A DNA stretch of 64,000 bases from Schmidtea nova. Taxonomy: Eukaryota. Under the pieces are notes generated by a model. That model made no database searches. It worked only from the letters and a program-made list of their open reading frames with translations, and had not been told where the DNA came from. The DNA is taken from positions 283,030,001-283,094,000 of the forward strand of contig CM097882.1 in the NCBI GenBank assembly GCA_044892505.1. The letters are read 5' to 3'. Every line of letters starts with the position of its first letter. The first letter of the stretch is position 1. This document shows, one piece after another, positions 2 to 60,037 of the stretch. Made by a program: the position numbers and the translations under genes.

Positions 2-3000
2 ATTGGATATATCTTTGTAAGTTATCGTCTTGGTTAGCGATTTTGTACACCATTCCCTAATATTCCTGAATAATGCTTCTTTTTCACTTTCGAATTTACA
101 CTCTTCTTTGTTTTTGGACATTATGATATTTCCTCTATCTAATAGCGTTAACAGTGTTTTCTGATCACAAACGAATTTTAATAGAAATCGTAATAACGCG
201 TTTTGTCCTTTGCTATATACTTCGTTTATATTTAACACCCATGTATCATTTTCGGATCTTTTCCATTTTATTAGCTTGCGTATTGTTTTGCAGTTACCGA
301 TTTTTATTGCTTCCTTTATTATATCACCTTTGATCAGTTCATCTATTTCCCAAGTGGCCTTCTCGATTATTTGTTTGAGCATTATCTGATTTGAGCTCCA
401 TATTGCGTGATTCAAGACTGTTTTGTTTTCTCTATCGCGTTCTGTCCAGTTGAAATCGGCATTTATCAAAAGGTCTATTATTGCTTTATCCGATTTGTAG
501 ATGGCTGCTACCATTAATGGTGTTTCTTGTTCGCTATTCCCAAAACCAAGGTGTTGGTTTGTTTCCTTAGCGATTTTTAGAAATTCTTTTACTCTCTCTA
601 CTTCTCCCCATTTTATGGCGTTATGTAATGCTGGTTGTCCTCCTATGTCTTCTAGTGAAAGTATTTCTGGAATCTTTTCCAGTAGTTCTGAAATGACTGG
701 TTTTGTTGGTAGTCCCCTTGCGTAATCACTAATTATCGACTGAATATCTCTTAATATATCGTCTCTGAAATGCCATTTTCCCATTATTTCTCTGGCTTTT
801 AGTACAATTTCCTTGTTTCTTTTTTCTCGTTGATTGTTCTCTGCTTCGGTGCTTTCATTGGTTGCTCTGAGCATATTCATTCTGGCTGTCTGGGATCTGG
901 TTATTATTCGTTCTTCTGGCGCTGTGGTTATTGTCTTTGGTACTTTTTTACATCTGCATGTATTAACGTATATTGGTCGTATCAATGGTCGATTAACAAG
1001 TTTTACCTTCACATTGTTTTCCTTTTTGTATATAACTTCGTAAGGGCCTTTTCCTGGTCTTTGTAGTTTTTTAACGGTTCCTGGTATTATTTCTGGGGTT
1101 TCTATCATTACCCAATCTCCGGGTTTAAGATCATTTGTTTTAACATTTTTCTTTTGATCGTGTAGGTCCTTGTAACTTTCTTGATAAAACTTTATGTTTA
1201 GTTCTGCTGTCTTCCATATCTCTTGCATTCGTTCTTTGAATTTGGTGACGTAATCATCTTCCTCCATATATTGAGACAAAGGTGGTTGATATTCAAGATC
1301 TATTGGCATATTGCATTCCCTTCCATACATTAATTGAAATGGACTCAATTTTGTTGCTGCGTGTATCGACATTCGGTATGCCATTAGACATAGCTTTATG
1401 TACTCATCCCAATCTGTTTGGTGTTTGCTTACATAATTGGATAACATTCGAATCAATGTGCCGTTAAATCTTTCCGTTTGTCCATTAGTTTGCGGATGAT
1501 ATGGTGACGTTCGTAATTTGGCTATTCTGAAGTAATTTGTTACTTCATCTAGTATTTCGCTCATAAAATTTGTTCCTTGATCTGTTAGTATTTGTTTCGG
1601 GGTTCCGTATCGACAACATATTTCCTCTACTAAAATTCTTGCTACGGTCTTTGCTTTTTGATCCGGCATCGCAAATGCTTCAGGGAATTTAGTCAAATAA
1701 TCCGTTATTACCAATATATATTGATTCCCGTTTAAACTTTCTGGCAATGGTCCTATTACATCCATCGCAATGGTAGTCATTGGTTCCGCTGGTATTGGCA
1801 TGGGTTTTAAGGGATTTTTCCATTTCTTCCCACTATCCTTTCTTGTGGCACAAGTTAAACAGTTCTTTATCCATTCCTTTACGTCTTCGTCCATTGTTGG
1901 CCAATAATATTTTTGTCTCATGCGATTTAATGTTTTCTTATCGGACATGTGTCCTCCCAACTTTCCGTCATGGTATTGAGTTATTATCTCTTTTCGTCTA
2001 TTACCTGGCAGACACATTAATCGTTTCTCTCCATCTCGTATTAATAACCATCCTTTTTCTATTGTGTATCGATGTTGGTATTTCCTCATGTGTTCCTTTA
2101 ACTCTGCATTGTCTTTGAATACATCCATATTTCGTGAGCTTAGGAATTCTATGATGGGTCTTAGTTCTTTATCCTCTTGCTGATCTTTCTTTAACTCACT
2201 GAAATCCAAATCCTCTGCTATCATTATGCATATTCTTTGCACTTCTGGGTCTGTTAGTTCTGGAAACGTTAATCTTGACATGCAATCTGCGTTGGCATTC
2301 GCTTTTCCTGATTTGAATTTTATATCTGGTGAATATTCTTGTAATTGCATCGCCCATCTCATTAATCTGCTGGATGTTTCCTTATGTTGTCCTAGCCATA
2401 CAAGTGGTTGATGGTCTGTGGTTATGCATATGACGTGTCCCCATAATAGATATTTGAAGTGTTTTATTGCTAATATTATTGCCAATGCTTCTCTTTCCGT
2501 TACTGAATAATTCTTCTCGTGTTTCTTGAATGTTCTGCTATAATATCCGATTACCCGCTCTTTTCCCTCGTCATCATATTGTCCTAACACTGCTCCTGCT
2601 GCATATCCACTTGCGTCGGTTGCGAGTAAAAATGGCTTTTTGAAGTCCGGGTGAACCAATATTGGTGCAGTTATTAGCTTATCTCTCAATGTTTCAAAGG
2701 CTGTTTGTTGTTCGCTTCCCCATATGAACGATACGTCTTTCTTTACTAGCTCCTGGATTGGTTTTGCAATCCCTGCGTAATCCTTTATGAATTTTCTATA
2801 GTAACCGCATAATCCGAGAAATTCTTGGATCTGCGTTATCGTCTTTGGTACTGGACATTCTTTTACTTTATCAATGTTTCTGGGATCTGGTTCCTTTCCT
2901 TTTGCGGACACAATATGTCCTAAGAATGTCACTTTCTCCTTTGCCCAATCGCATTTCGATGGTTTGAGCTTGAGTTTCCATTGTCTCAATCTAACAAATA

Positions 3001-6000
3001 CATCTCTGATATCTTGGATGTGTTGTTCAAATGTGCTTGAGTAGATCAGTAGGTCGTCAATGTAAACCATGCATTGTTTTATGCCGTGGGTAACGAAATT
3101 CATACATCTTTGAAATGATGCTGGCGCATTGGTTAGTCCGAATGGCATTTTCCTAAATTGGTACAAGTCTCTTCCGATAGTGAAAGCAGTTTTCTCTTTG
3201 TCTTCCTCCTTCATTTTAATTTGCCAGTATCCGCTTTTCAAATCTAATGATGTAAAGTATGCCGCTCCTTGTAATGTCAATAACATCTCGTTGATGTCTG
3301 GTAATGGGTATGTATCCCTTTTTGTAACTGTATTTAATCTCCGATAATCAATACAAAATCGTTGTGTTCCGTCTTTCTTTTTCACCATTACAACTGGGAA
3401 TTGCCACGGTGAGCAGCTTGGTTCAATTACTTCTGCGTCTAGCATTTTCTGTACCTCTGCTTCTGCTACTGATTTTTGCGCTTCAGCTAACTTGTATGGT
3501 CTTAAAGCAATCGGCGTTTCGTCTGTTAGTGGAATCGTATGTAGTGTGACGTCACATGTCCCTAGATCTAAATCGGATGCCGCGAATATGTCTTTATATT
3601 CTATCAGTAATCTTTCTAGCTGTTTCTTTTGATCCTCATTCAATAGTTGGCTATCAATGTTCCAAGTGGGTTCTTCCTCTTTTACTCCTTCTTTTATTGG
3701 TATTTCGATATCTATCATTGGAGTTAGTTTACCTAATCTTTCATTTTCATAAATTATTTTATCCTCTTCATCGAAATTTACTACATTTATTGGGATTTCT
3801 CCGTTGTCATTCGCACTCACTAATCCCCTTGCCATTGGCAACGACTTTCTCTTTTCAAATCTTTTACTGGGTTCAAAGATCATGTCACCTTCTATTGTAG
3901 GATCTATTTTTACGAAACATATTTTCTCTCTCCGTGCTGGTACGATTATTTGTTTCGAACTTGTTACTTTTGCTTCTATTGCGCATATCTGTCCTGTCCT
4001 ATCCTTCAATCTCATTGTTCCGAGGTCAATAACTATTTCTTTAAATAATGCTGGCATTAAATCTGTGCCTATAATGCATGGTACGCTTAGTGCTGGTATT
4101 ACTGCTACGTACGTTTCGATTTCCGTGTTTTGATGTTTTATCTTTACCCACCATCTTCCGGCAACTTCTACTACTTCTTTACTGCATGCTATTACGTGAA
4201 CGTTGGTTCTCTCGATATCCCGTCTTTGTTCTTGTGGTATCCATTTTATATCTATTGCTGAGATATTTGCTCCTGTATCGATCATCGCTTCTATTTCCCT
4301 TCCGTTAATTTCGATTGTTGTAGTTAATACTGGACCGGTGTTTGATGACATTACTGCAATTGTATGTGAGTCTCCTTGCGGATCTACGCTTCTGCACCGT
4401 CTCGTTCTATAGTCTTCTGGTATCATAGGATATATGTTTGTCATCGGCATCATTTGCATTGTATTTTGTCTCATCCCTGGTGTTGGTTCTTGGTACATGG
4501 TTGGTGGGGGTGCGTAACACTTCCACATTTCCGCTGGATTCTTTTCGACATACTGTGGTACTTGATTTTTAAATACTTGACCTCCTTCGTTATCATCATC
4601 ATCGTCGTCACTGGAATCGTCTTGGGTTCTGTACCCTTTCATTCTTTCCCATAGTCCTTTTCTCTCTTTCTTTAGTTGTTGTCTTGCTTGCTCGTTATTC
4701 ATTATCTTTTTAAATTTTCGTCCCACCTCTTCATCGGTTCCTTTCATTTTTGCCAGTATTTTTAGGAGTCTCTTTATTCGGTGAATATCTTTTGAATGAC
4801 CGTGTAATACCATTGTTTTAGCCAAAAATGGTAAGAATCCTACCACCAATTTCCAATTTACTTTCTTTTCTCTTTTATAGATGTCAAAACAGGCTAACAT
4901 TTGCGTTATTATTACCCGTATTATTTGTATAATTAGTATAACACCAAGTATTCCTGCCATCATTTGTCCAAATATTAAAAATCTTCCCCACATCGCTTTC
5001 ATCATGTTTTCCGTTGCCTTCTTAAAGTGGGCTGGTGACAATAATAATTCGTAATTTGGTCCACTTTGGTAATTTGTTCCTCCTGTTATTGTTACAATAC
5101 TGGATAACACCGCTTCTCGTCTTGCCGGAAATAGTATGTTTTGTCTTGCTGCTTCTAAATCCTTTGCACTATAGAATCCCATATTGCTTACATCTACGTC
5201 TTTAAATTTTCGTCCTTTTGATAGTTGCATTAATTCAAATTCTCTTGGTGCTGGTACCTCTGTTCTTGACGGAAACATAACCCAATTTCCGTCTGGTTTT
5301 TGGTATAGTGGTCCATATGCGTTGCTACAATTGAAAGGGTTTGGTTCGAAACTTACTGGATTTATGATTCTTGTCACTGGTTGTACATATCTTACTTTCC
5401 CTTTATATTCGATTTCTAGTTCGTTAGTACACTGACCTGGTTGTAGTTTTGTCATTGTCGCTACCTTCGCATTTGTCTTTTTACATATGTATACGTACAT
5501 GACCTCTCCGACTACTCTTCCAAAATGACCTTCTCTTAATGGTAATAATGGCATTGCACTATCCGGGTTTGTGATTGCTACTGCTAATTTTGTCTTTAAT
5601 ATTTCCCTATTTAATATGCAATCGTTGTTTATTAAATCGTAATACACTTTTTGTAGTGACGCTTGTCCTCTATGGAATAGAAAATCCATTTTATTGTTCA
5701 TGTAAAGGTGTAATTTAACATCGTTCGTGTGTACTTTGCGTTTCGCACTAGGTACTTCTTGTTTTGATACAAAAATGCCGGGGTAGTTGGTTTCCAACAT
5801 GGCTACTCCGCATTTCAAGGCTGTTTTTCCTTTTACAAACCTCATTCCGATATCTGCATCTGAGGTAATTAGTACCGTTGGTGTATTTCTCATTTTAATT
5901 TGTTTTTCTTGTGTTCGGGTTTCAATCTTTTTCTCTCCCCGTACTGTGTCTTGAAGTATTTTTCCTCTTGCTGCCTCGTCTTCTTCTTCCTCTTGGAAGG

Positions 6001-9000
6001 TTTTCCCTTGTATCTCATCGAATTCTGCTTCCTTTAACAGTTGTAGTTGACATTCCTTCCCTCGTATCTGGTAGGTTAGGGTTGACATACCAGTCTGACA
6101 AGTGTTTGACTCGATTTTGCACATAGGTAGAGTTTTCATTTCTCCCGTCGTTGGATCGAAGAATGCCTCGTACGTTTTTAGTTCCACTGTATACGTATCT
6201 ATTACCACTAGGTTTGTTGCTGCTACTCCGAATATTGGATATGTTGCTCCTTGGCAGTACCCTTCTCCTCCCGTAATAGCTCCTGCTACATAATATGTTT
6301 GTTGCAATATCACTCCCGTTTTTCCTCTTATCTTTACTCTATCTCTAGTCTCTACTTCTCCATGTTTAAATAATTTTTCACAGTCTTCTCCTTGCAGCAT
6401 TACCGATTCTCTTTCCGTTCCTGGCATCACGATTGCTGAATAATGGCGGTGCCCACAATAAAAAGCAAATCTGGTTTTATAAACTTTGCATTCTCTGACC
6501 ATTGTTCTTATCAGTTCAGCTTCCTGATATACGTGGTATAATTGTCTCTTTTTTAATGTTTTTAGCTCCGTTGGGGTTGCGTCTTTACATTGTTCTGTCC
6601 CTCGTAATGAGTATTTTTCACCTAATGCCATTTGATCACAATCGAATACTTCAAATGCTGTTGCTCCGTCAGTACTAATCATCCATATTAATATCATCAT
6701 AATGATAGAACTCAGGTTTAGTGATGATTTCCCGTTTCCTGTTCCCGACTTTTCCTTTTCCAATTCTCCCAATATCTCTTCGAATTTCTTTTTCATATTT
6801 TTGGCTTGGTTTTTCTTTTGGTTCGTTTTTGTGAATGTTTCCCATCCTCCTTTACTGATGATGTACGGTTCTATTTCTTTCTCTATAATTTTGGCTGTAT
6901 TCTTTATATGTCTTTCAAGTGCTGTGGGTTTCAGTCGACCTCTACTCAGTGTCAGCAGATTGTAGATGGTGTATGCCATAGCTATTAAATATTTGTTATC
7001 CGTCTCTGCTCCTTCCGTTACCTTCTTTATCAACATCGTGGTTCCTTGCCAATCTAGGTGGTTTGACCTTGTCTTCTCTTTTATTAATTCTGGTAGGATT
7101 GGTGCGATGGCGCTATGCAGTGATTTCGCCCTTTCGCTTATTTCATTTATTCTCCACCATTTCTTTAATTCTGGATCGATTATTGCCAGTATTTCCATTA
7201 ACATCTTTGATATCCATTCCTCGCCTTGGTATGTTTGTGTTGTTTCTTTTTCTTTCGTTTCGGCTATTTTATTTAGTTTCTTTAAACACAAATCCCATTG
7301 ATCCCGTCTTTTTTCCTCTCTTGATTTTATAACTACATTTGCTGGATCCATCTTGGGTCTACCTCTAGGTCGTTTATCCATTGTCGTGCCCGTTTCTACT
7401 AATCTTGTTTCTCGTCCAGTTTCTTCTGTGACGTCTCTTGGTTCATTGGCTCTTTCTTCTAACCATCTTTCCATTTCTTGTGTGAATTGTACGTTTTCTA
7501 CATTTGCCCTCCTTGCTTCCTCTTCTGCTATTTCATTTACTTCTTCTATGATTATTTCTTGTTCGACTTCATCTTCGGTGTTGGTTACCGGTATTGCTGT
7601 TGGTAATTCTTGAATTCTTTCGAAAATATTATCATCTTTCTCTTTTGTTAGCTCTATTAACTCCTCTAACATATCATCGCTATCTGTAAAAATTTCGTCT
7701 TCATCGTATGGTTCCGGTGGTGTTCTTTCTCTTGTCTCTCTTGGTGTTGTTCTAGTTTGTTCTGAGCTTGTTCCTGGAGTCATTACCGATTTCATTGGGC
7801 TCGGCGTACTCATACTTCCTTTTGGTTTCTTTTCCTCTTTCAATTTCAATGGTTGGCCTGCTATTGCTGCCACTGTCAATGTATTTGCGATATCTAATTG
7901 CGCTGGCGTTATTCCAATTTCCAAGCTGTTATCTAATGATCGTCCTTGGTGTTGTAAATGGAATGGTGGTTCATATCTCAATTTCTTTTTAATGTCTCGA
8001 ACTTTCTCCGCTATCCCTACCCAAAACTCTTCCTTTTCTTGGTTCGGATATACTATTCTTAGGTGTACTTTCTGTGGCGATTCCTGCGAGAATTCTTGGT
8101 TTCTCCATTTTTTAATTACGTGATCCAATTGTTCTGGACACCACTCGTTAACTCTTTTGTATTCGGCGATTGCTTTTGCTACTTTACGCAAGCATGTTAT
8201 GTCTTCTCCATTAACTACGAAAAAATCTGCGAGACCTTTTACTACTTTTCTCTTGCCGTGCGCATTGGTTTTTAATATTTCGACAAATTCCTCTGTTTTT
8301 TGTTTCTCTCTTTCCAACCACATGGTTGCCGTTTCTGGTCCGTCTATATCAGCTGGCATGGCTTTTCTTGTTACCATACAAACCCTTCCCGTTTCCGGTT
8401 TGTGATCGTCTTCTATGCCTATTTCGTATTCCTCTTCGTATTCGCCTGCTTTTGGTTCCCAACATTTTCCTCGTTCGTTCCACCGTTTTTCTACAGGTGT
8501 TCGTAATCGTCTGTTGAGATTGAGTTCTTCTAATACATCTTCCCATTCTGGCCAAATCCGCCAATTTCGATAAATGTCTACTATTTGTTGTAATTTATGC
8601 ACAACTTCTTTTTGTCGTTCCCGTTCTCTTTTCTCATCCTTAGCCGTTTCTCTTGGTGTATCGTCCATTCTGATAACGTGGATGGTTTGGTGATTATCCC
8701 ATATACCAATTTTATATAGCCGTCTTTCATCGTGATCCCATAATACATGTTCGTTGTATTTCATGATTATGTCATCTTCCCATTCTTCTTCTGGTTCTCT
8801 TTGTAATAGTGTCTCGTTGATGACATTTACTAATTCTTTTATGGTACAATCTGCTACCACTTCAATTTCTTTGGTATCCTCATTAGGTAACTCTACTGCA
8901 ATTTTCAGATCTGTTATTTTCCCTTGTCTGAACATTGCTTTTCCCATTTTGGCAATTACTTTTCCGTATGAGATCTGTGACCATCTCGTGTGACTTGTGT

Positions 9001-11701
9001 CACGTATGCACTCGATACATCGTTTCAACTTTTTGTATTCGCTTCTCATTAACTCCTTTCTATGTTTTTTGATTTGTGGGATGATTTGTTCTATCATGGA
9101 ATTTAGATTTCCTCGTAAGATTCGTCCTTTCTCATATTCTAACCGTGGTTTTATCTTCTTCTCGAAACACGTATTTGCTTCCTTTGCTACTTCTTGTAGG
9201 TTCTCTTCTCTCTTATCATCGCATATCGATAATGTTGTCACCTCTCCTGGCCATATGCCTGTTTCTATCAAATGCGTCCTTTTCTTCACTAGTCCATTCT
9301 GTGAATAGAGGAATTTGTTTTTATATGAACTCCCTAATCTATCCTCTACCCATTGGTAAATATCTTCCGTGAGTGGAGTTTTGATCCAAATCCTTGGCAA
9401 ACATGTTTTTATCTCTATTAGGATTATATATTCATGGAGTGGTTCTTTTAATAATTTTCCTAGGTATTGGCTTAGTGTTTCTACTTCCCGGCCTGGTAAC
9501 CACTCTTTATAGTTCATTTGTAATATCGCTCTCATGAATTTCCGATAGTGTTTCTTGTCGATGAACTCCTCATTATATATTACTTCTAGCGCGTTATCTA
9601 ATAATTTCTGGATCTCGTCCTCTTTTACTTGAATAGTTTCTGGCGTCTTTACTACTTCTATCTTTTTGTCTTCAATTTCCGGTTCGTTTAGCATATCTCC
9701 GGCTAGACTACTGACGTCACTATCCTCTTCGTCATCTGAAAAATTCTTTGCCTGGCCTCTCAACATGTTAATGTGTTTTATCTGGTTGATTTCACTTGGT
9801 GTATTTTCCGTTGATCTTGTTTCACTTTTAATAGCTTTTTGTGTTGATTCACTCTTGTCGTCTACTACTTCGACCTTTCTCAATTTTCGTTCTAACTCGT
9901 CTATTTCTCTCAACCGTCTTCGTATCATTTTCCCTTTAAATATTCGACTGATTCGTGTTTCGTGACGCACTGGCGATGGGATTCCTTCTGGTTCTATTTC
10001 CTTGATTACCATCACATTTCTTTTTGTCTCTACTACTCCCATGTTTTCCCATGTATCCGTTAGTTTCAATTTTACTTCTGGTGCACCTTCTATTTTTAGG
10101 AATGCTTCTCTGGGCAGTTTCGTTACTCCTGGAGCCATTTCATTCACTTTATTGAACAATATTTCTACTTCTTCCTTTATGTTATATTGGAATCGAAACA
10201 CGTGCTTGTTTGGCAAAATTACCATCATTCCTCTTTTCCCGAGTTTCCTTTTCTCTTCTTGGTTCCCTTCTTTTTCTACTTCCTTTTCTGTTTCTTTTTC
10301 TGCTTCTTCGTCTTCTTGTATTATCTCTTTTCGGCCTTCGTTGTTGGTTGGATTCGAGTTTGTTGGATTTATTTCTGGTACAGTCTCTTTCTCGTGGGTA
10401 TTTGTTTGATTGGTTGCTCTCATCATATTAATTCTTAGAGGTTGTCGTTCTCTTTCTTGCTGTTTTTGTTCCTCTTCTCTTTGTATTCTTGCCCATTCCT
10501 GAGCATGTCGTGCTTGACTTTCCCGATTCAATCGTTCGTTTTCGCTTTCTATTTTTCTCATCATATTGATTTGTTGTTGACCTGTTTGCGGATTTCCTCT
10601 GTTTGTATTGTTTATCAGCTCCGTCAATCTTTGAACCTCTTGCATTAAATGTATCTCTTTAGTGGTATTTTTATTTTGGTTATTATTATTACTATTTGGT
10701 TGGTTTCCGTATTCCGGTTGGTTTCCATTATTTGGCTGATTTCCATAATTCTGTCGGTTTCCACCAGTTGGTTGGTTTCCATAGTTTTGTCGGTTTCCGG
10801 TATTCTGCCAATTTCCTCGTTGATTGCTTCTTTGTCCGCAATTTCTTGATAGGTGTCCAGGTCGTCCACAATTAAAACAGGTTATTGTGTAACATCTGCT
10901 CTCTGAATGCCCTTTTACTCCACATTTTCCACAATTCAAGTTCTGATAACATTCTTGTTGCCAATGTCCCAATTTCCCACATGTTTTGCATTGTTTCGTT
11001 GGTCCTTGGGGGTTGTAATTGTTTTGATTTCCGTAATTTGATACTTTATTCCCTTCATTCCTTCGTTGCGGTGGTGGTCGGTTTAATTGTTGTGAATTTG
11101 GGATGTGGTTATTCAGGTTCACTTCTTGTTCGTTTTGTGCTGTATCCATAGCTAAATAGATTCTACCATCATTTCCTATCATGTGTAGTTCAAATCTATT
11201 AGCTGTTTCTAGTGCTTGGTCGATGGTTTTACAACCTTGGCATCCAACTTGCGCTCTTATGTCGGGTCTTCTTAATCCTCCCACAAAGATAGCTGCCATT
11301 AACTCCTCATTTATTGGACTGTCTTGATTGAAAATCAACTTTGCTAACTTTTTTAATTCGCTTGCATATACCGCATTCGATTCATTTATCTTTTGTTTCC
11401 TCATTGAGAATTCCGTGAATGCCTCATTCAATACTTTGTTTATTCCAAAGGTTTGTTGGAAAAAGTCCTTTATCGCTGACCAACTTGTAGGTGGATTAGT
11501 TCCATTTTTTGCTTCCAAATATAGATCTAATGCGCTATCTTTCAAATATAGCTGAATTCTGCTTACAGTTGTTTCTGGTTTCCACTTGCATACTTCCACG
11601 AATATGCCAAATTCCTTTAAGAAAGTTTCCAGTTTACTCGCATCTCCATTAAACGGTTCTCCGGAAAATTTGTCTTTTATCTCTTCTCTGGGTTCGCTCA
11701 T
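2..11701 (-). CDS. Single Gag-Ubl-Bcl2-Env-PR-RT-RH-IN-ankyrin polyprotein, at least 3900 aa, open at the window edge
   Basis: Anchor codons all share one frame (lowest codon coordinate = 2 mod 3): ATG 11699-11701, CCHC 10865, Ubl 8885 and 8063, GGW 6842, FYCG 6452, DTG 4277, YIDD 3053, GGH 1949, ankyrin 623. No ORF ending in this frame is listed in the track, consistent with no stop before position 1. The frame is open upstream to a TAA at 12161-12163. Confidence 0.9.
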   Translation of the reverse strand, partial: MSEPREEIKDKFSGEPFNGDASKLETFLKEFGIFVEVCKWKPETTVSRIQLYLKDSALDLYLEAKNGTNPPTSWSAIKDFFQQTFGINKVLNEAFTEFSMRKQKINESNAVYASELKKLAKLIFNQDSPINEELMAAIFVGGLRRPDIRAQVGCQGCKTIDQALETANRFELHMIGNDGRIYLAMDTAQNEQEVNLNNHIPNSQQLNRPPPQRRNEGNKVSNYGNQNNYNPQGPTKQCKTCGKLGHWQQECYQNLNCGKCGVKGHSESRCYTITCFNCGRPGHLSRNCGQRSNQRGNWQNTGNRQNYGNQPTGGNRQNYGNQPNNGNQPEYGNQPNSNNNNQNKNTTKEIHLMQEVQRLTELINNTNRGNPQTGQQQINMMRKIESENERLNRESQARHAQEWARIQREEEQKQQERERQPLRINMMRATNQTNTHEKETVPEINPTNSNPTNNEGRKEIIQEDEEAEKETEKEVEKEGNQEEKRKLGKRGMMVILPNKHVFRFQYNIKEEVEILFNKVNEMAPGVTKLPREAFLKIEGAPEVKLKLTDTWENMGVVETKRNVMVIKEIEPEGIPSPVRHETRISRIFKGKMIRRRLREIDELERKLRKVEVVDDKSESTQKAIKSETRSTENTPSEINQIKHINMLRGQAKNFSDDEEDSDVSSLAGDMLNEPEIEDKKIEVVKTPETIQVKEDEIQKLLDNALEVIYNEEFIDKKHYRKFMRAILQMNYKEWLPGREVETLSQYLGKLLKEPLHEYIILIEIKTCLPRIWIKTPLTEDIYQWVEDRLGSSYKNKFLYSQNGLVKKRTHLIETGIWPGEVTTLSICDDKREENLQEVAKEANTCFEKKIKPRLEYEKGRILRGNLNSMIEQIIPQIKKHRKELMRSEYKKLKRCIECIRDTSHTRWSQISYGKVIAKMGKAMFRQGKITDLKIAVELPNEDTKEIEVVADCTIKELVNVINETLLQREPEEEWEDDIIMKYNEHVLWDHDERRLYKIGIWDNHQTIHVIRMDDTPRETAKDEKRERERQKEVVHKLQQIVDIYRNWRIWPEWEDVLEELNLNRRLRTPVEKRWNERGKCWEPKAGEYEEEYEIGIEDDHKPETGRVCMVTRKAMPADIDGPETATMWLEREKQKTEEFVEILKTNAHGKRKVVKGLADFFVVNGEDITCLRKVAKAIAEYKRVNEWCPEQLDHVIKKWRNQEFSQESPQKVHLRIVYPNQEKEEFWVGIAEKVRDIKKKLRYEPPFHLQHQGRSLDNSLEIGITPAQLDIANTLTVAAIAGQPLKLKEEKKPKGSMSTPSPMKSVMTPGTSSEQTRTTPRETRERTPPEPYDEDEIFTDSDDMLEELIELTKEKDDNIFERIQELPTAIPVTNTEDEVEQEIIIEEVNEIAEEEARRANVENVQFTQEMERWLEERANEPRDVTEETGRETRLVETGTTMDKRPRGRPKMDPANVVIKSREEKRRDQWDLCLKKLNKIAETKEKETTQTYQGEEWISKMLMEILAIIDPELKKWWRINEISERAKSLHSAIAPILPELIKEKTRSNHLDWQGTTMLIKKVTEGAETDNKYLIAMAYTIYNLLTLSRGRLKPTALERHIKNTAKIIEKEIEPYIISKGGWETFTKTNQKKNQAKNMKKKFEEILGELEKEKSGTGNGKSSLNLSSIIMMILIWMISTDGATAFEVFDCDQMALGEKYSLRGTEQCKDATPTELKTLKKRQLYHVYQEAELIRTMVRECKVYKTRFAFYCGHRHYSAIVMPGTERESVMLQGEDCEKLFKHGEVETRDRVKIRGKTGVILQQTYYVAGAITGGEGYCQGATYPIFGVAATNLVVIDTYTVELKTYEAFFDPTTGEMKTLPMCKIESNTCQTGMSTLTYQIRGKECQLQLLKEAEFDEIQGKTFQEEEEDEAARGKILQDTVRGEKKIETRTQEKQIKMRNTPTVLITSDADIGMRFVKGKTALKCGVAMLETNYPGIFVSKQEVPSAKRKVHTNDVKLHLYMNNKMDFLFHRGQASLQKVYYDLINNDCILNREILKTKLAVAITNPDSAMPLLPLREGHFGRVVGEVMYVYICKKTNAKVATMTKLQPGQCTNELEIEYKGKVRYVQPVTRIINPVSFEPNPFNCSNAYGPLYQKPDGNWVMFPSRTEVPAPREFELMQLSKGRKFKDVDVSNMGFYSAKDLEAARQNILFPARREAVLSSIVTITGGTNYQSGPNYELLLSPAHFKKATENMMKAMWGRFLIFGQMMAGILGVILIIQIIRVIITQMLACFDIYKREKKVNWKLVVGFLPFLAKTMVLHGHSKDIHRIKRLLKILAKMKGTDEEVGRKFKKIMNNEQARQQLKKERKGLWERMKGYRTQDDSSDDDDDDNEGGQVFKNQVPQYVEKNPAEMWKCYAPPPTMYQEPTPGMRQNTMQMMPMTNIYPMIPEDYRTRRCRSVDPQGDSHTIAVMSSNTGPVLTTTIEINGREIEAMIDTGANISAIDIKWIPQEQRRDIERTNVHVIACSKEVVEVAGRWWVKIKHQNTEIETYVAVIPALSVPCIIGTDLMPALFKEIVIDLGTMRLKDRTGQICAIEAKVTSSKQIIVPARREKICFVKIDPTIEGDMIFEPSKRFEKRKSLPMARGLVSANDNGEIPINVVNFDEEDKIIYENERLGKLTPMIDIEIPIKEGVKEEEPTWNIDSQLLNEDQKKQLERLLIEYKDIFAASDLDLGTCDVTLHTIPLTDETPIALRPYKLAEAQKSVAEAEVQKMLDAEVIEPSCSPWQFPVVMVKKKDGTQRFCIDYRRLNTVTKRDTYPLPDINEMLLTLQGAAYFTSLDLKSGYWQIKMKEEDKEKTAFTIGRDLYQFRKMPFGLTNAPASFQRCMNFVTHGIKQCMVYIDDLLIYSSTFEQHIQDIRDVFVRLRQWKLKLKPSKCDWAKEKVTFLGHIVSAKGKEPDPRNIDKVKECPVPKTITQIQEFLGLCGYYRKFIKDYAGIAKPIQELVKKDVSFIWGSEQQTAFETLRDKLITAPILVHPDFKKPFLLATDASGYAAGAVLGQYDDEGKERVIGYYSRTFKKHEKNYSVTEREALAIILAIKHFKYLLWGHVICITTDHQPLVWLGQHKETSSRLMRWAMQLQEYSPDIKFKSGKANANADCMSRLTFPELTDPEVQRICIMIAEDLDFSELKKDQQEDKELRPIIEFLSSRNMDVFKDNAELKEHMRKYQHRYTIEKGWLLIRDGEKRLMCLPGNRRKEIITQYHDGKLGGHMSDKKTLNRMRQKYYWPTMDEDVKEWIKNCLTCATRKDSGKKWKNPLKPMPIPAEPMTTIAMDVIGPLPESLNGNQYILVITDYLTKFPEAFAMPDQKAKTVARILVEEICCRYGTPKQILTDQGTNFMSEILDEVTNYFRIAKLRTSPYHPQTNGQTERFNGTLIRMLSNYVSKHQTDWDEYIKLCLMAYRMSIHAATKLSPFQLMYGRECNMPIDLEYQPPLSQYMEEDDYVTKFKERMQEIWKTAELNIKFYQESYKDLHDQKKNVKTNDLKPGDWVMIETPEIIPGTVKKLQRPGKGPYEVIYKKENNVKVKLVNRPLIRPIYVNTCRCKKVPKTITTAPEERIITRSQTARMNMLRATNESTEAENNQREKRNKEIVLKAREIMGKWHFRDDILRDIQSIISDYARGLPTKPVISELLEKIPEILSLEDIGGQPALHNAIKWGEVERVKEFLKIAKETNQHLGFGNSEQETPLMVAAIYKSDKAIIDLLINADFNWTERDRENKTVLNHAIWSSNQIMLKQIIEKATWEIDELIKGDIIKEAIKIGNCKTIRKLIKWKRSENDTWVLNINEVYSKGQNALLRFLLKFVCDQKTLLTLLDRGNIIMSKNKEECKFESEKEALFRNIREWCTKSLTKTITYKDISN
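250..650 (-). other. Ankyrin-repeat region fused downstream of integrase (element 1)
   Basis: GQPALHNAIKWGEVREVKEFLK, EQETPLMVAAIYKSDKAIIDLLINADFNWTERD and ENKTVLNHAIWSSNQIMLKQII match the ankyrin TPLHxA...V.xLL pattern at about 33-aa spacing. Confidence 0.8.
1000..2000 (-). other. Integrase domain (element 1)
   Basis: YHDGKLGGH...CLTC zinc motif, AMDVIGPLP, LTDQGTNF, PYHPQTNGQTERFN, and C-terminal GKGPYEV. Confidence 0.97.
2290..3560 (-). other. Reverse transcriptase and RNase H (element 1)
   Basis: RFCIDYRRLN, LDLKSGYWQI, MPFGLTNAPASFQR, VYIDDLLI, FLGLCGYYRKFI, LATDASGYAAGAVL, YSVTEREALA, TDHQPL. Confidence 0.98.
3990..4330 (-). other. Retroviral-type aspartic protease (element 1)
   Basis: IEINGREIEAMIDTGANISAI ... 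CIIGTDLM. Confidence 0.95.
4800..6720 (-). other. Envelope glycoprotein, chuvirus-G / herpes gB-like (class III fusogen-like), element 1
   Basis: Hydrophobic signal SIIMMILIWMISTDGATA, then a Cys-rich ectodomain of about 550 aa (FEVFDC, YHVYQE, VRECKV..FYCGHRHY, NDCILNREILK..AITNP, GRVVGEVMYVYICK), then TM FLIFGQMMAGILGVILIIQII. Family assignment is from recalled motifs. Confidence 0.75.
6830..7300 (-). other. Bcl-2-like domain (element 1)
   Basis: BH2-like TAKIIEKEIEPYIISKGGWETF, preceded by BH1-like IKKVTEGAETDNKYLIAMAYTIY. It occupies the same position as a clearer copy in element 2. Confidence 0.6.
7860..10228 (-). other. Cluster of 2-4 ubiquitin-like/UBX-like beta-grasp domains (element 1)
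   Basis: About 8670-8910: LKIAVELPNEDTKEIEVVADCTIKEL...MKYNEHVLWD..RRLYKIGIWD..TIHVI. About 7860-8070: KVHLRIVYPNQEKEEFWVGIAEKVRDIKKKL..FHLQHQGRSLD. Weaker candidates at about 9225-9430 (LIETGIWPGEVTTL) and 10005-10228 (MMVILPNKHVFRF..LKLTDTWENMGV). Confidence 0.55.
10830..11701 (-). other. Gag (capsid-like region plus three CCHC zinc knuckles), element 1
   Basis: PFNGDASKLETFLKEF...YLKDSALDLY, then CKTCGKLGHWQQEC, CGKCGVKGHSESRC, CFNCGRPGHLSRNC. Confidence 0.93.
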
Positions 11702-12677
11702 TTCAATTCCGCTGTCTGTAGTTATTTTACTTTCGTTTCCTCTTGTTTCTAGTTCACTGTTAGGTTCGTCACTCGAATTTCGGTCGATCTCAGTTTCTTT
11801 TGCTGATTCGTTATCTGATGCTTTACTATCGTTATCGGTATCGTCACTTTCTGTTTCTTGTTCTACTTCGTCTTCTATTTCTTCTATATAATCGTTGTTG
11901 GTTTTGTCGACTTCTATTTCACTTATTGGGTTTCTCTCGGGTTCTGCTTGATTTTCTTTGTTGCTTGAACTGTTGCTTGTTACTGATAATTTATCGTTTT
12001 CGATAATCGACTTTTGTATTATTATCTGCCTTGCTTTACTTCCTTTTGGGCCTTTCTGATTATTATTCTTGGTAGCTTTATTCTTTTCTGCTGGTTTTAT
12101 TATGACACTCTTTTCTCCTTTTCTCAACGGAATTACTTTTGTATACTCAATTTTCCTGTCTTATCGTGTTCCGATTCTTTTCTTCCTTAGTTGATTGGTT
12201 TGGTTTGATTGATTTATCTAAAATACAAATGTCACTTCAACGATACTCTATTGTTATCGTTGCGCTTTTATTCCCTTTTTACGGGACTTCTCATTACTGG
12301 GTTTCTATTATTTTTCCCCATTCCCAGATTCCCCTTTATTTAAGTCTATTTAAATTATCTATATACTAGTCACAATTATCTATTTAGTCATAACAATTAT
12401 CTATCGGTTATTAAAATACATCAATTATTTTTCCCGCGGTCTCCCAATTTATTTGTCGTTCGAACGCTCTAATTCCCTGAGTCATTTGACTCGATTATTA
12501 TTTTATCATCTCTTTATCTTTCTCTCTGCTAGCCTCTAATTATTAATTCTGCCGGTCTTTCCGGTCAGCTCCTATTTCTCAATTCTACTTGCATGCATTA
12601 TTTTAGGTCGCATAATCAGCTTTACTCGCATTTCTCTATTATCGGTGCGCACTATTCTCATTATCGTCGACGATCAC

Positions 12678-13075
12678 AACTCTGGGCCTATATTCCCTCT
12701 GTTGTTATTTCTTATCACTTGCAACCCTGGGCCTATATTCCCTCCGTTGCTACTCAAATGATTGTAACCCTGGGCTTATATTCCCTCCGTTAATATCTTC
12801 CTTTAATTTTAAATAATTGCAACCCTGGGCCTATATTCCCTCCGTTGCTACTCAACAATTGTAACCCTGGGCCTATATTCCCTCCGTTACTATATATCCG
12901 GATATCCCTATTGGCTCCTTTGGCCTCTAATTAATATCAATTATCTCAAATGGCTCTTATGGCCTCAAATTCATATTTCATTATCTCAAATGGCTCTATT
13001 GGCCTTAAATTCATATCTCAATTATCTCAAATGGCTCTATTGGCCTTAAATCATATCTCTCAATAACGCCTAGCT
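12678..13075. repeat. Two short tandem arrays in the 5' leader of element 1
   Basis: About 5 copies of caaccctgggcctatattccctccgtt (12678-12890) and about 4 copies of atctcaaatggctctattggcct (12930-13060). Confidence 0.85.
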
Positions 13076-13103
13076 AGGTCATTCAATATGGCTCTTTGGC
13101 CTC

Positions 13104-13317
13104 AACCCTTTGTTTCAAGGGACAAACCGCTGATAACCCTTTGTTTCAAGGGACAAATTCTAATAACCCTTTGTTTCAAGGGACAAACCGCTGATAACCC
13201 TTTGTTTCAAGGGACAAATTCTAATAACCCTTTGTTTCAAGGGACAAACCGCTGATAACCCTTTGTTTCAAGGGACAAATTCTAATAACCCTTTGTTTCA
13301 AGGGACAAACCGCTGAT
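13104..13317. repeat. Alternating 31/30-bp tandem array (ABABABA) in the leader of element 1
   Basis: Core aaccctttgtttcaagggacaaa followed alternately by ccgctgat or ttctaat; unit starts at 13104, 13135, 13165, 13196, 13226, 13257, 13287. Confidence 0.95.
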
Positions 13318-13794
13318 AACTTTTCCTTAACCGGTTAATCGTAATTCTTAACTTCGCTAGCGACTACAATTTCTCAGCTGAGTTCTCTCAATTTCATGCG
13401 AGCTGATTATGCACCTCTTATTTTTCTCTATAATTCCTCGATTCTTTGTTTTATTACTAATTCTTTCGCTGATCAGTCATAATTCAATTTTTATTATTTT
13501 CTCTGCGCGCATCTTACCTCATCAGGGTTTTCCCTATTTCTCTCCCCAACCAAAATATACAAAAAGATCGCGTTGGTCTACTAATGCGGGATGTGGTGAT
13601 CAATCACATCACAAAAGCTTTCCAACATTTGCGATTGGCCCCTTTCTATATACCCCGAGTGGGTTGATCAACTGGTACCTCCCAATGGGTGCTTAACGGA
13701 CTACTTGACAGTAGCTCAAAAATTAATTAACATTGTTGATTGCTCCCTTGACTTTGTCATTCGATACAATATATTAACACACTCTAAATATTTA

Positions 13795-14256
13795 TTATAA
13801 ATAAACTACAATTTTATCAGCTACAGAGAAATTGCACATGGGGCACTCATCACACTTATTCGCACAGTTTTTACAGAATCGAAAATGTCCACATGGTAAA
13901 AACATTATTTGGATTTCACTGTTTTCGCATATGTAACATTGTTTATATTGTTTTGCTGCCTCGACCCCTTGCGACATCCATCGGTTATATGTTAGGCTTA
14001 ACTGCTGTTCTATATGTCGGCATCTGATATTCAACTCGGCATCCTCTAATCGTGCTTTGTACCATTTATATCGCGTATTTATATCGAGTTTATTTACTTT
14101 CTCTATGATTTTTATTAACTCAGTTGTTTCCTCAGTTTGTGTCGTAGGTTCCTCATATTCGGATGCTCTTATTCGGGTTATTTTTTCGCAGACTGTCTCA
14201 AATGTTTCGTTCTCGGTGTTGAAAAATTCCTCGATTTCTTTCAGTTTTTCCTCCAT
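13795..14256 (-). CDS. IAP/MDM2-type C-terminal RING-HC protein (153 aa, no BIR domain) between PBS and gag
   Basis: CYICENSEIQIMFLPCGHFRFCKNCANKCDECPMCNFSVADKIVVYL-stop: C3HC4 spacing with the short hydrophobic tail typical of IAP RINGs; coiled-coil-like N-terminus. Confidence 0.85.
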   Translation of the reverse strand: MEEKLKEIEEFFNTENETFETVCEKITRIRASEYEEPTTQTEETTELIKIIEKVNKLDINTRYKWYKARLEDAELNIRCRHIEQQLSLTYNRWMSQGVEAAKQYKQCYICENSEIQIMFLPCGHFRFCKNCANKCDECPMCNFSVADKIVVYL

Positions 14257-14562
14257 TTCCTAGATAATTTATTTAATTACTGTGTTAATATTATTCGAAA
14301 AGTAGTACTGTGTTTCGTTTCTGACAGTTTTATAGCCTCCCCCCGTGTTTCGGTAAAATGTCGTCCCGACCTGTTATTTATGAATGCATTTGTTTAATTT
14401 ATCTACTAATTTGTTTTAATTCTCTGTTTGTAATTATCTATTTCCACGCAACTCACTCTTATCTCGATTACTCTTTCGGTTACTATTTCTACTCACAAAA
14501 TTCTGATTTTAAATTTCTCTGTTGTCATTGGGTTCACATTTTCCGCATAAAAACAAAGTTGA

Positions 14563-14580
14563 ATCCCGGCTGAGCCCCCA
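14563..14580 (-). promoter_or_regulatory. Primer-binding site, tRNA-Pro-like (element 1)
   Basis: Minus strand TGGGGGCTCAGCCGGGAT matches the canonical tRNA-Pro PBS TGGGGGCTCGTCCGGGAT at 16/18. Confidence 0.8.
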
Positions 14581-15114
14581 AATTTATGCTGGGATTATGG
14601 GTGGGTTTTAAGTAATTCAAATAAACAATTAATCATACTAGGGATTCCGCGCCCATAACCATACATAACATGACTACTACACGCGTATGCCCTTGACTAT
14701 TCCCTACTAGTCAAGTTGGTACTGCATACGGTGGTGGAAAAATGATGGGCAGGTGAGCTTTGTCGCCAAAACTACTCCCCATTTATCTTCCCTCGGGTTC
14801 TTGCTGCCGATAGAAGGTCTTACGCATTTACATTCTATGGATGTTCGTTTCTTACTGCATTTTATACTACATATACTTATGATCTATCACACGCTTTTCC
14901 CAATGACGCTCTCCCTCGCTGTTCTACAAGCCGACGAAAACTCTCGCTGCTAAGCAACGGTCGGTGTAGGTTTTACGATGCGATTTTCAGTTCTACGAAT
15001 TACTTATGTAGTCTTATTTTATTTAGTGAAATCACAAGATGAGAGAAAAAATTTACCCAGTAATACTTTTATTGAAATAATAAAGACAGGTTGTTATTTT
15101 ACATTGAGGTTTTC

Positions 15115-15699: not shown

Positions 15700-16015
15700 G
15701 TTGTCTGAAGATTATAACGATAAATCCACTGGAGGGCCTATCAATAATGTTATTTTATTTAAACAACTATTATTATTATTACACGAGATGTATATTAATG
15801 TTTTTAATTGTTGAGTTCTCTACAAAATTATTTAACTATCTAATCATTGAAGACTCAAAAGGTTTATTGAACTAATTTTATATTAATAAATGAATTTCCT
15901 AATGACTATAACAACTACAATACTAAATCTACATGACAACACTATTAACAAAACGAACATTTCAGAATTCTTTAAAACATTTATTTAATTTAAAAACAGG
16001 CGGCCATTGGTTCAG

Positions 16016-46071: not shown

Positions 46072-46086
46072 TATCTCCCCCCTTTA
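46072..46086 (-). promoter_or_regulatory. Polypurine tract of element 2
   Basis: Minus strand AAAGGGGGGAGATA immediately before the 3' LTR TG. Confidence 0.9.
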
Positions 46087-47058: not shown

Positions 47059-47101
<43 letters not shown>

Positions 47102-47237
47102 TTAATAATAATAATAATAATGTGTTATTTATTGTCAAAAAATTAAATATTCATTGATATATTCATCAACGATGTTAGCAACTGTTGTAATAGATAATAA
47201 GTAGTGTGTTCGAGAAAAAAAAATTTCAATGATAATG

Positions 47238-47276
<39 letters not shown>

Positions 47277-58520: not shown

Positions 58521-58586
58521 ATTAACCTTGTCTCTTTGTGGTGACGGTGATGTTGACGGAGATCTTGATTTAGCATAACAATTTCT

Positions 58587-60034: not shown

Positions 60035-60037
60035 AAA

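What the first reader, a model, noticed from the sequence alone, without database searches (positions are those of the whole stretch)
2..11701. Hidden polyprotein of at least 3900 aa that threads an envelope glycoprotein between Gag and protease in one reading frame
Seen: every anchor motif from the Gag ATG to position 2 is in one frame, and I translated the env-TM-to-protease junction without a stop (..GLWERMKGYRTQDDSSDDD..IDTGA). Known: env-bearing LTR elements (retroviruses, errantiviruses, Ascaris Tas, mosquito BEL/Pao elements with chuviral glycoproteins) normally carry env as a separate ORF 3' of pol. Inference: here Gag and accessory domains stay cytosolic, an internal signal inserts the ectodomain into the ER, and the TM returns the chain to the cytosol for PR-RT-IN. 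That is a flavivirus-like polyprotein topology in a retroelement, giving 1:1:1 Gag:Env:Pol unless splicing intervenes. The ORF track misses it because it has no stop in the window. I cannot confirm this layout is undescribed.
Basis: partly seen in the sequence, partly recalled or inferred. Interest (0 to 1): 0.95.

Follow-up and report, generated by a model that had tools for sequence, protein, structure and literature searches.

The report
Burro-like retroelement with in-frame envelope
The window holds an intact giant Ty3/Gypsy-type endogenous retrovirus whose single reading frame of at least 3,900 codons really does carry a chuvirus-like fusion glycoprotein between Gag and protease, but this layout has already been published for planarian Burro elements and for GAG-ENV-POL errantiviruses.

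Summary
The minus-strand frame 11701->2 is open for 3,900 codons, while the other five frames hold 100-434 stops. It encodes, in order: Gag with three CCHC knuckles, about 1,300 aa of accessory sequence, a signal-like segment, a glycoprotein ectodomain, one transmembrane span, PR, RT, RNase H, IN and ankyrin repeats.

The glycoprotein is a class III fusogen. It hits Pfam Monjiviricetes_fusion at E 4e-69. Its AlphaFold model (pLDDT 85) matches herpesvirus gB at E 1e-14 and chuvirus glycoproteins at E 1e-42.

The layout is not a one-off. A second, diverged and broken element in the same window (45278-60831, LTRs 99.7% identical) has the same gene order. At least eleven proteins from public assemblies, only 28-40% identical in env, keep env and PR in one chain.

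The topology features (signal-like segment, single span before PR) are conserved across these relatives.

The layout is not new. Arkhipova & Yushenova 2019 described in-frame env between gag and pol in planarian Burro elements. Chary & Hayashi 2026 described GAG-ENV-POL elements with gB-type ENV in flatworms, bryozoans and nematodes.

Verdict: a real, well-preserved new member of a known kind. The host could not be identified.

The parts
2..11701 (-). Element 1: open reading frame of 3,900 codons (Gag-accessory-Env-PR-RT-RH-IN-Ank); it leaves the window at position 2 without a stop
10712..11701 (-). Element 1 Gag region (aa 1-330), with three CCHC zinc knuckles at 10838-10990
   Evidence: weak similarity to the Gag parts of P0003 and P0004
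6722..10711 (-). Element 1 accessory region (aa 331-1660). No Pfam family found. Its last ~200 aa are helical with a GGWE motif (BCL2-like candidate, not established for this copy)
6653..6721 (-). Internal signal-peptide-like segment (aa 1661-1683): short hydrophobic core followed by a small-x-small motif, just before the conserved start of the ectodomain
4976..6652 (-). Env ectodomain (aa 1684-2242), a class III (gB/chuvirus G-like) fusogen; all 21 near-invariant family residues are present
4892..4975 (-). Env transmembrane span (aa 2243-2270), the only strong span in the 3,900 aa
4337..4891 (-). Env cytoplasmic tail and acidic linker to PR (aa 2271-2455). It contains an amphipathic stretch that does not score as a membrane span
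4037..4336 (-). Retropepsin (PR), with the D-T-G active site
2909..3385 (-). Reverse transcriptase (RVT_1, YIDD motif)
2333..2722 (-). RNase H
1436..2008 (-). Integrase (H2C2 zinc finger plus rve core)
359..628 (-). Ankyrin repeats downstream of IN, in the same frame
11702..17500 (-). Probable 5' leader or accessory part of element 1, assigned by composition only. Contains tandem repeats at 12912-13320 and three same-strand ORFs, including an IAP-type RING ORF at 13795-14256. The 5' LTR was not identified; GC falls to about 0.22 at ~17.5 kb
   Evidence: no homologues in relatives, so membership is unproven
45278..60831 (-). Element 2: complete LTR element of the same architectural type. LTRs of 794 nt at 45278-46071 and 60038-60831 (99.75% identical), TG..CA ends, 4-bp target-site duplication
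60016..60034 (-). Element 2 primer-binding site, 3 nt downstream of the 5' LTR; a polypurine tract abuts the 3' LTR at about 46072-46085
50786..59632 (-). Element 2 coding region, in the order gag-accessory-env-PR-RT-RH-IN-tail, colinear with element 1. It is broken by 6 interruptions (3 frame changes, 3 same-frame stop sites): gag 2, env 2, PR/RT boundary 1, post-IN 1
54723..56495 (-). Element 2 env domain (signal-like segment to membrane span), 32% identical to element 1 env. Its N-terminal two thirds lie in one uninterrupted 1,122-codon stretch with the last Gag knuckle and the accessory region
51343..54216 (-). Element 2 PR (53923-54216), RT (52795-53271), RNase H (52219-52608) and IN (51343-51903) domains
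48166..49134 (-). Element 2 accessory ORF downstream of pol, exonuclease-like. Homologous ORFs follow the polyprotein in two relatives, one of them annotated RNase_T

Best explanation
Element 1 is a young, apparently intact copy (as far as the window reaches) of a giant Ty3/Gypsy-type endogenous retrovirus of the Burro / GAG-ENV-POL errantivirus kind. A class III fusion glycoprotein, most similar to those of chuviruses (Jingchuvirales), was captured long ago together with its own signal peptide and membrane anchor. It sits in frame between the Gag-accessory part and PR-RT-RH-IN.

Shown here: the single frame, the domain order, the fusogen fold, and the conservation of order, frame and hydrophobic segments in many diverged relatives.

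Inferred mechanism: the genomic RNA is translated as one chain. Gag and the accessory modules stay in the cytosol. The internal signal-like segment (aa 1661-1683) targets the ribosome to the ER, and the ectodomain is translocated. Signal peptidase cuts after the small-x-small motif. The single span (aa 2243-2270) stops transfer, so the tail, PR, RT, RNase H, IN and the ankyrin repeats are made in the cytosol. Retropepsin then releases the cytosolic products.

A further inference: the upstream product keeps the signal segment as a C-terminal membrane anchor. This would suit the BCL2-like module that the literature places directly before env in Burro.
For: - Open frame of 3,900 codons, log10 P = -126 by chance.
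- Pfam domain order.
- Env fold: Pfam PF24664 at E 4e-69. A profile of 100 homologues hits 37 herpesvirus gB sequences in the PDB. The AF2 model has pLDDT 85.1. Foldseek matches gB at E 1.6e-14 over 640-780 columns and chuvirus glycoproteins at E 1.7e-42, TM-score 0.55-0.63. All 21 near-invariant family residues are retained.
- Conservation of the layout: element 2 in the same window has the same order. P0001-P0005 (2,627-4,057 aa) are colinear with element 1, at 31-37% identity in env and 43-45% in PR-IN. P0017, P0019 and P0021, at 28-31% env identity, also keep env and PR in one chain.
- Topology: exactly one strong membrane span lies between the ectodomain and the first PR in 11 of 13 long chains. 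The hydrophobic segment plus small-x-small motif precedes the conserved ectodomain start in the five relatives aligned through that point, besides element 1; the L004 row has the hydrophobic segment too but ends before it. The segment lies 39 aa before a conserved Cys. In 86 free G-sized homologues the N-terminus lies a median of 44 aa before that Cys, and 70 of the 86 have a hydrophobic core there. So it is the ancestral G signal peptide.
- No conserved Met precedes the signal segment in the relatives, which argues against an independent env start.
- Cytosolic-type modules (ankyrin) follow the span, either before PR (P0003) or after IN (element 1).
- Literature: in-frame env in Burro (PMC6431247); GAG-ENV-POL with gB-type ENV (PMC13524379).
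Against: - There are no transcript or protein data, so splicing cannot be excluded.
- No dedicated signal-peptide or topology predictor was available. I used Kyte-Doolittle windows and a 19-residue sum on the Hessa scale, whose values I recalled from the literature.
- The charge difference across the span is small (+2 versus +3).
- An internal signal after about 1,660 cytosolic residues is unproven for any retroelement.
- The BCL2-like assignment is weak here. The window's own segment gives no Pfam hit. Bcl-xL appears only at E about 1.2. Pfam Bcl-2 hits only 2 of 6 relatives (best E 0.0017). The structure model was unusable (pLDDT 41).
- Element 2 as it stands is not one frame (6 interruptions).
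- Element 1's 3' end, its LTRs and its host are unknown.
Confidence: 0.7

Rival explanations
1. The continuous frame exists in the DNA, but expression is retrovirus-like. Env is made from a spliced subgenomic mRNA (for instance one that borrows the gag start codon), or Gag-Pol is made from an mRNA with the env segment spliced out. In that case the giant membrane-threaded chain is rarely or never produced.
For: By established knowledge, retroviruses and insect errantiviruses express env from spliced RNA. The relatives have no conserved Met before the signal segment, so an env-only mRNA would need an upstream start codon, as some retroviruses do.
Against: Splicing would not require env to stay in the same frame as both gag and pol without a single stop. 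Yet that is kept in element 1 and in at least eleven other chains that are only 28-40% identical in env. The hydrophobic segments needed for co-translational threading are also conserved.
Confidence: 0.24
2. The env segment is a decaying relic or a nested insertion of an endogenous viral element inside an ordinary Gypsy element. It has no function, and the open frame reflects only the youth of the copy.
For: Element 2 has a broken env, and one relative contig (L005) has the env region split over separate ORFs.
Against: The order and frame are shared by lineages below 50% identity to each other. All 21 near-invariant residues and 14 ectodomain cysteines are kept. The fold model is confident. 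The signal and anchor are conserved.
Confidence: 0.04
3. Assembly artefact: a chimeric join of unrelated sequences happens to produce a long frame.
For: The window contains five N runs, so the assembly is not gap-free.
Against: There is no N run inside 2-11701. Chance is excluded. The same architecture occurs in independent assemblies from ENA, NCBI and JGI.
Confidence: 0.02

Closest known systems
Burro (GYPSM1) giant Gypsy-like LTR retrotransposons of planarians (Grohme et al. 2018; Jurka 2007; domain analysis in Arkhipova & Yushenova 2019, PMC6431247)
   Same: A giant single ORF1 that starts with Gag plus three CCHC knuckles. A long accessory region with ubiquitin-like and BCL2-like modules. 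Env in frame between that region and PR, with hits to mononegavirus fusion glycoproteins. Then PR-RT-RH-IN and ankyrin repeats. Also tandem repeats and accessory ORFs, and an AT-rich host genome.
   Different: No sequence comparison with Burro was possible, because no reference sequence was reachable. In the window's part of the ORF, Pfam finds no MATH_TRAF_C, no BIR, and no dUTPase between PR and RT. The BCL2-like module is not detectable in this copy. Published ORF1 lengths are 4,873-5,140 aa, whereas this ORF reaches 3,900 aa and is cut by the window. The review likened the env to gypsy Env by HHpred, whereas here the fold is clearly class III (gB/chuvirus G). The host is unknown.
GAG-ENV-POL 'errantiviruses' with HSV/gB-type ENV in Platyhelminthes, Bryozoa and Nematoda (Chary & Hayashi 2026, PMC13524379; nematode elements of Sacco et al. 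2022)
   Same: Ty3/Gypsy pol, a gB-type (class III) ENV, and env placed between gag and pol. Many young copies have nearly identical LTRs, as element 2 does here.
   Different: That paper treats gag, env and pol as three ORFs and allows gaps of up to 2 kb. It does not mention fusion into one frame ('polyprotein', 'fused', 'single ORF' and 'in-frame' each occur 0 times). The giant accessory regions are not discussed there.
Anakin and other mosquito BEL/Pao and Gypsy elements with a captured chuvirus glycoprotein (Dezordi et al. 2020, PMC7642597)
   Same: An LTR retroelement captured the same glycoprotein family (Jingchuvirales-type G, Pfam PF24664).
   Different: The backbone is BEL/Pao and the hosts are arthropods.
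Glycoproteins of Jingchuvirales and herpesvirus gB (class III fusogens)
   Same: Same fold over the whole ectodomain, conserved cysteines, an N-terminal signal and a single C-terminal anchor.
   Different: Sequence identity is 10-20% to the named viral proteins. Here the protein is not free-standing but embedded in a retroelement polyprotein.
Polyproteins of flaviviruses and pestiviruses (functional analogy only)
   Same: A cytosolic capsid-type protein is followed by an internal signal sequence, lumenal glycoprotein ectodomains and membrane anchors that return the chain to the cytosol for the enzymes. Processing is shared between host signal peptidase and a viral protease.
   Different: There is no homology. 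Those viruses have many spans and several glycoproteins, RNA replication enzymes instead of RT and IN, and a serine protease rather than an aspartic one. The analogy has not been tested for this element.

Membership tests
Ty3/Gypsy (Metaviridae) LTR retroelement | pol domain order PR-RT-RNase H-IN, with the IN H2C2 finger and rve core | tested here: met
   element 1; element 2. The closest named pols are Ty3/gypsy or erranti-like at about 35% identity.
Ty3/Gypsy (Metaviridae) LTR retroelement | Long terminal repeats with TG..CA ends, a short target-site duplication, PBS and PPT | tested here: met
   Met for element 2 only: 794-nt LTRs 99.75% identical, TG..CA ends, 4-bp duplication, PBS and PPT. 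For element 1 the 3' end lies outside the window and the 5' LTR was not found, so these features are not testable for it.
Ty3/Gypsy (Metaviridae) LTR retroelement | Gag with CCHC nucleocapsid knuckles | tested here: met
   Three CCHC knuckles at aa 238-288. Element 2 has Retrotrans_gag plus knuckles.
Burro-type giant elements | env in frame between Gag/accessory domains and PR, within one giant ORF | tested here: met
   description of the family.
Burro-type giant elements | Accessory modules: ubiquitin/SUMO-like, BCL2-like directly upstream of env, and ankyrin repeats after IN | tested here: inconclusive
   Ankyrin: met. BCL2-like: GGWE motif in 4 of 7 aligned sequences, Pfam Bcl-2 in 2 of 6 relatives at best E 0.0017, Bcl-xL at E about 1.2, model unusable. 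Ubiquitin: found in relative P0003, not in element 1.
Burro-type giant elements | MATH_TRAF_C, BIR, and dUTPase between PR and RT | tested here: not met
   No Pfam hit in the 3,900 aa or its sub-pieces. BIR lies C-terminal in Burro and could be beyond the window. Divergence beyond Pfam's reach is possible.
Burro-type giant elements | Total length above about 25-30 kb; host in the planarian family Dugesiidae; sequence similarity to Burro-1 to -4 | not testable with these tools
   The element leaves the window; by composition at least about 17.5 kb of it is inside. No host gene, tRNA or Rfam family is present in the window. Exact-match look-ups were empty. No Burro reference sequence was reachable.
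GAG-ENV-POL errantiviruses with HSV/gB-type ENV | gB-type (class III) ENV lying between gag and a Ty3/gypsy pol | tested here: met
   family description.
Class III viral fusogens (gB / rhabdovirus G / chuvirus G) | Characteristic multi-domain ectodomain fold with a central helix and a single C-terminal anchor | tested here: met
   Foldseek probability 1.00 to more than 50 gB chains over the full ectodomain. TM-score 0.55-0.63 to chuvirus G models. One span. Trimerisation and fusion activity are not testable here.
Pfam PF24664 Monjiviricetes_fusion | Score above the curated gathering threshold (27 bits) | tested here: met
   233.6 bits for element 1, 178.4 bits for element 2, 215-326 bits for relatives.
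Flavivirus-like membrane-threaded polyprotein (works-like claim, not membership) | Internal signal sequence cleaved by signal peptidase, and an odd number of spans returning the chain to the cytosol | tested here: inconclusive
   The sequence features are present and conserved. Cleavage and topology themselves cannot be shown by sequence.

The most novel reading that the evidence does not exclude
The family translates Gag, a complete class III envelope protein and Pol as one chain threaded once through the ER membrane, a strategy otherwise known only from RNA-virus polyproteins. The captured glycoprotein's signal peptide would double as the C-terminal membrane anchor of the upstream anti-apoptotic (BCL2-like) module. 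The family would also be far more widespread and diverse than the planarian Burro elements: at least ten lineages below 50% identity occur in environmental and host-associated assemblies, with shuffled accessory modules, duplicated proteases, a conserved downstream exonuclease and possibly a second membrane protein.
Probability: 0.4. Interest if true: 0.6.

Novelty: new member of a known kind. Interest (0 to 1): 0.35.

Why it matters
The copy is unusually well preserved. It has 11.7 kb of uninterrupted coding sequence with every family-conserved env residue in place, so it is useful for annotating this genome and as a clean example of the GAG-ENV-POL single-frame layout.

- A firm structural assignment of the in-frame env to class III, chuvirus-like fusogens.
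- Positional evidence that the internal hydrophobic segment is the ancestral G signal peptide.
- The conservation of 'one span before PR' across lineages that share only 28-45% identity.
- The finding that the single-frame layout occurs in many unnamed lineages in public assemblies.

These points make the membrane-threaded polyprotein hypothesis concrete enough to test with transcript and proteome data. There is also a practical lesson: ORF listings that drop frames running off a contig hide such elements.

Tried and rejected
- Exact look-up of ten complete ORFs of the window in the 15-billion-protein collection: none found, so no host identification.
- tRNA and Rfam scans of the window: nothing.
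- ORFs between 18 and 45 kb: only other mobile elements (Polinton-type PolB, pogo-type DDE, another retropepsin), no host gene.
- Single-sequence search of env against PDB sequences: empty. The profile and the fold search were needed.
- Pfam on the accessory region, the env-PR linker and the PR-RT spacer: nothing credible, hence no MATH, BIR or dUTPase.
- AlphaFold on the pre-env segment with six sequences: pLDDT 41, unusable. I spent no fold search on it.
The whole L005 locus was still among the files of a later local BLAST database and gave no hit.
- Search for element 1's PBS using element 2's PBS: only element 2 matched. Element 1's 5' LTR remains unlocated.
- The upstream same-strand ORFs of element 1 (RING and others) have no homologue in relatives, so their membership rests on composition only.
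- Sacco et al. 2022 and Grohme et al. 2018 are not held, and the eLife paper has no supplementary files held.
- Chance and assembly artefact were rejected as explanations.
- The N runs in the window were left untouched.
- The consensus lines that the alignment tool printed were not used.
Full report
**1. The observation**

Translating the minus strand from 11701 to 2 gives 3,900 codons with no stop, and the frame leaves the window still open. The other five frames of the same stretch carry 100-434 stops, and their longest open runs are 78-169 codons. From the strand's base composition a stop is expected every 14 codons, so an open run of this length has log10 P of about -126. No N run lies inside it. 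The ATG at 11701 is the first Met of the frame. The ORF tool does not list the frame only because it omits ORFs that run off the source.

**2. What the frame encodes**

Pfam on the whole chain, with motif positions, gives this order:
- three CCHC knuckles (aa 238-288)
- Monjiviricetes_fusion viral glycoprotein (PF24664; 233.6 bits, E 4.1e-69)
- retropepsin (aa 2461-2551, D-T-G)
- RVT_1 (aa 2773-2931, YIDD)
- RNase H (aa 2994-3123)
- integrase H2C2 and rve (aa 3232-3403)
- ankyrin repeats (aa 3692-3781)

The roughly 1,300 aa between Gag and env, the env-PR linker and the PR-RT spacer give no credible Pfam hit.

**3. The env segment is a class III fusogen of the chuvirus type**

A full HMMER scan of 1.84 billion representatives with aa 1650-2330 found 989 relatives (49 below 1e-30). 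The nearest roughly twenty lie inside much longer proteins. After them comes a large set of free 650-700-aa proteins at 23-27% identity.

A profile of 100 of these hits 37 distinct herpesvirus gB sequences in the PDB at E about 0.002. The AlphaFold model built on that alignment is confident (mean pLDDT 85.1, with 371 of 681 residues at 90 or above). Foldseek places it with herpesvirus gB at E 1.6e-14, probability 1.00, over 640-780 columns. Against predicted viral structures it sits closest to chuvirus-type glycoproteins (Soybean thrips chu-like virus 4, Tacheng tick virus 4, Wenling crustacean virus 14 and others) at E 1e-42 to 1e-36 and TM-score 0.55-0.63.

All 21 near-invariant residues of the family, including 11 cysteines, are present in the window's copy.

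**4. The layout is conserved**

Inside the window, a second element lies at 45278-60831 on the same strand. It has:
- 794-nt LTRs that are 99.75% identical
- TG..CA ends and a 4-bp target-site duplication
- a PBS three bases after the 5' LTR
- a polypurine tract before the 3' LTR

It is colinear with element 1, at 32% identity in env and about 40% in PR-RT-IN, and has the same order gag-accessory-env-PR-RT-RH-IN. One uninterrupted stretch of 1,122 codons runs from the last Gag knuckle through the accessory region and the signal-like segment into the first two thirds of env.

As it stands, its coding region is interrupted six times between the gag ATG and the end of homology. There are three frame changes and three same-frame stop sites: two interruptions in gag, two in env, one at the PR/RT boundary and one after IN.

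Outside the window, a search restricted to env but with length matching on the whole chain found five proteins of 2,627-4,057 aa that carry PF24664, PR, RT, RNase H and IN together. All are colinear with element 1, at 31-37% identity in env and 43-45% in PR-IN, with env upstream of PR. The representative scan added more distant chains at 28-31% env identity. P0019 has Retrotrans_gag, env and PR. P0017 and P0021 have env, PR, RT, RNase H and IN.

These proteins come from ENA, NCBI and JGI assemblies. One sits in a genome bin labelled Flavobacteriaceae, which must be a misbinned eukaryotic contig.

**5. Topology**

The only strong membrane span in the 3,900 aa is aa 2243-2261, extending to about 2270. 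A later amphipathic stretch (aa 2283-2301) scores far from insertion. In 11 of 13 long chains, exactly one strong span lies between the ectodomain and the first PR.

Before the ectodomain there is a short hydrophobic core (aa 1666-1675), followed by a small-x-small motif and then the conserved start of the ectodomain. All seven aligned sequences have the hydrophobic core, and the five relatives aligned through to the ectodomain start also show the small-x-small motif before it.

In 86 free G-sized homologues the N-terminus lies a median of 44 residues (IQR 41-48) before a conserved cysteine, and 70 of them have a hydrophobic core there. In element 1 the internal core starts 39 residues before the same cysteine. 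So the internal segment is the signal peptide of the captured glycoprotein, retained inside the polyprotein. No Met is conserved in front of it.

But they are sequence features. Translation as one chain, signal-peptidase cleavage and stoichiometry remain inferences. The hydrophobicity scale values were recalled from the literature, and no dedicated predictor was available.

**6. The module before env**

The literature places a BCL2-like motif directly before env in Burro. The evidence here is:
- a GGWE motif in 4 of 7 aligned sequences
- Bcl-xL at E about 1.2 in two PDB sequence searches, over the same C-terminal part
- Pfam Bcl-2 as the top family across relatives, but in only 2 of 6 (best E 0.0017) and not in the window's copy
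- a structure model that failed (pLDDT 41)

I therefore treat the BCL2-like assignment as unproven for this copy. The idea that the signal segment doubles as its tail anchor is speculation.

**7. Comparison with what is known**

Arkhipova & Yushenova 2019 (PMC6431247) analysed planarian Burro (GYPSM1) elements. ORF1 is 4,873 aa in Schmidtea mediterranea and 5,140 aa in a second planarian. It has an N-terminal Gag with CCHC knuckles, then MATH, a ubiquitin/SUMO-like module, a BCL2-like module, an env region hitting mononegavirus fusion glycoproteins, PR, dUTPase, RT, RH, IN, BIR and ankyrin. [quoted passage not shown]

Chary & Hayashi 2026 (PMC13524379) report that Ty3/gypsy elements of Nematoda, Bryozoa and Platyhelminthes carry only HSV/gB-type ENV, arranged GAG-ENV-POL. 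They cite Sacco et al. 2022 for nematodes.

The window's element fits both descriptions in layout, fusogen class and accessory style. It lacks detectable MATH, BIR and dUTPase in the part visible here. Its pol is ordinary Ty3/Gypsy; the best hits are unnamed at 45-48% identity, and named ones are at about 35%.

I could not compare it with Burro sequences or name the host. I therefore file it as a new member of a known kind. It would be 'already known' if the host turns out to be a planarian whose Burro family includes it.

**8. Verdict**

Interest is moderate to low (0.35). The biology is striking, but the central claim is published. The additions here are confirmatory and refining.

Noticed in passing
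window 45278-60831: A complete second LTR element of the same architectural type: 794-nt LTRs 99.75% identical, 4-bp target-site duplication, PBS and PPT. The coding region nevertheless has six interruptions, which is many for such similar LTRs. Either an already defective copy was mobilised in trans, or the assembly has indel errors, or some boundaries are natural.
   Followed up: partly
window 48166-49134 (-); L002 12411-15688; L003 11946-12911: An exonuclease-like ORF downstream of pol in element 2 has homologues downstream of the giant ORF in two relatives (E 1e-32 and 4e-24). One of them is annotated RNase_T. It appears to be a conserved accessory gene of the family.
   Followed up: partly
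window 49552-50977 (-); C-terminal tails of P0001-P0005, P0008, P0017: After IN, element 2 encodes a signal-like segment, a region of about 300 aa with several N-glycosylation sequons, and a strong membrane span. Relatives have one or two strong spans in their post-IN tails. This may be a second membrane protein in the classical env position.
   Followed up: no
P0001, P0002, P0004, P0008, P0010, P0011: Several relatives carry two to four retropepsin-like domains in one chain, one directly after env. P0001 and P0002 also have a DDI-type aspartyl protease after IN.
   Followed up: no
window 11702-17500 (-): Upstream of gag in element 1 there is an acidic in-frame open stretch without a Met, tandem repeats (40-nt and 31/61-nt units at 12912-13320) and three same-strand ORFs. 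One of them has an IAP-type C3HC4 RING (13795-14256, E 2e-11). They have no homologue in the relatives. GC drops sharply at about 17.5 kb.
   Followed up: partly
L004 = NCBI GCA_003506685.1 contig DNYW01000170.1: A 9-kb contig in a metagenome bin labelled Flavobacteriaceae encodes a 2,627-aa env-PR-RT-RH-IN polyprotein of this eukaryotic retroelement family. It is almost certainly a misbinned contig.
   Followed up: no
window 34382-35131, 38367-38858, 42572-43667, 41866-42023 / 44573-44730: The rest of the window is a mosaic of other mobile elements: a Polinton/Maverick-type PolB fragment, a pogo-type DDE_1 transposase fragment, another retropepsin-bearing fragment, and a 158-nt repeat pair at 93% identity. 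No host gene, tRNA or Rfam family was found.
   Followed up: partly
P0003 (L001 281-12454): In this relative the ankyrin repeats lie between env and PR instead of after IN, and a ubiquitin domain lies between Gag and env. The accessory modules are shuffled within the family but stay on the predicted cytosolic side.
   Followed up: partly
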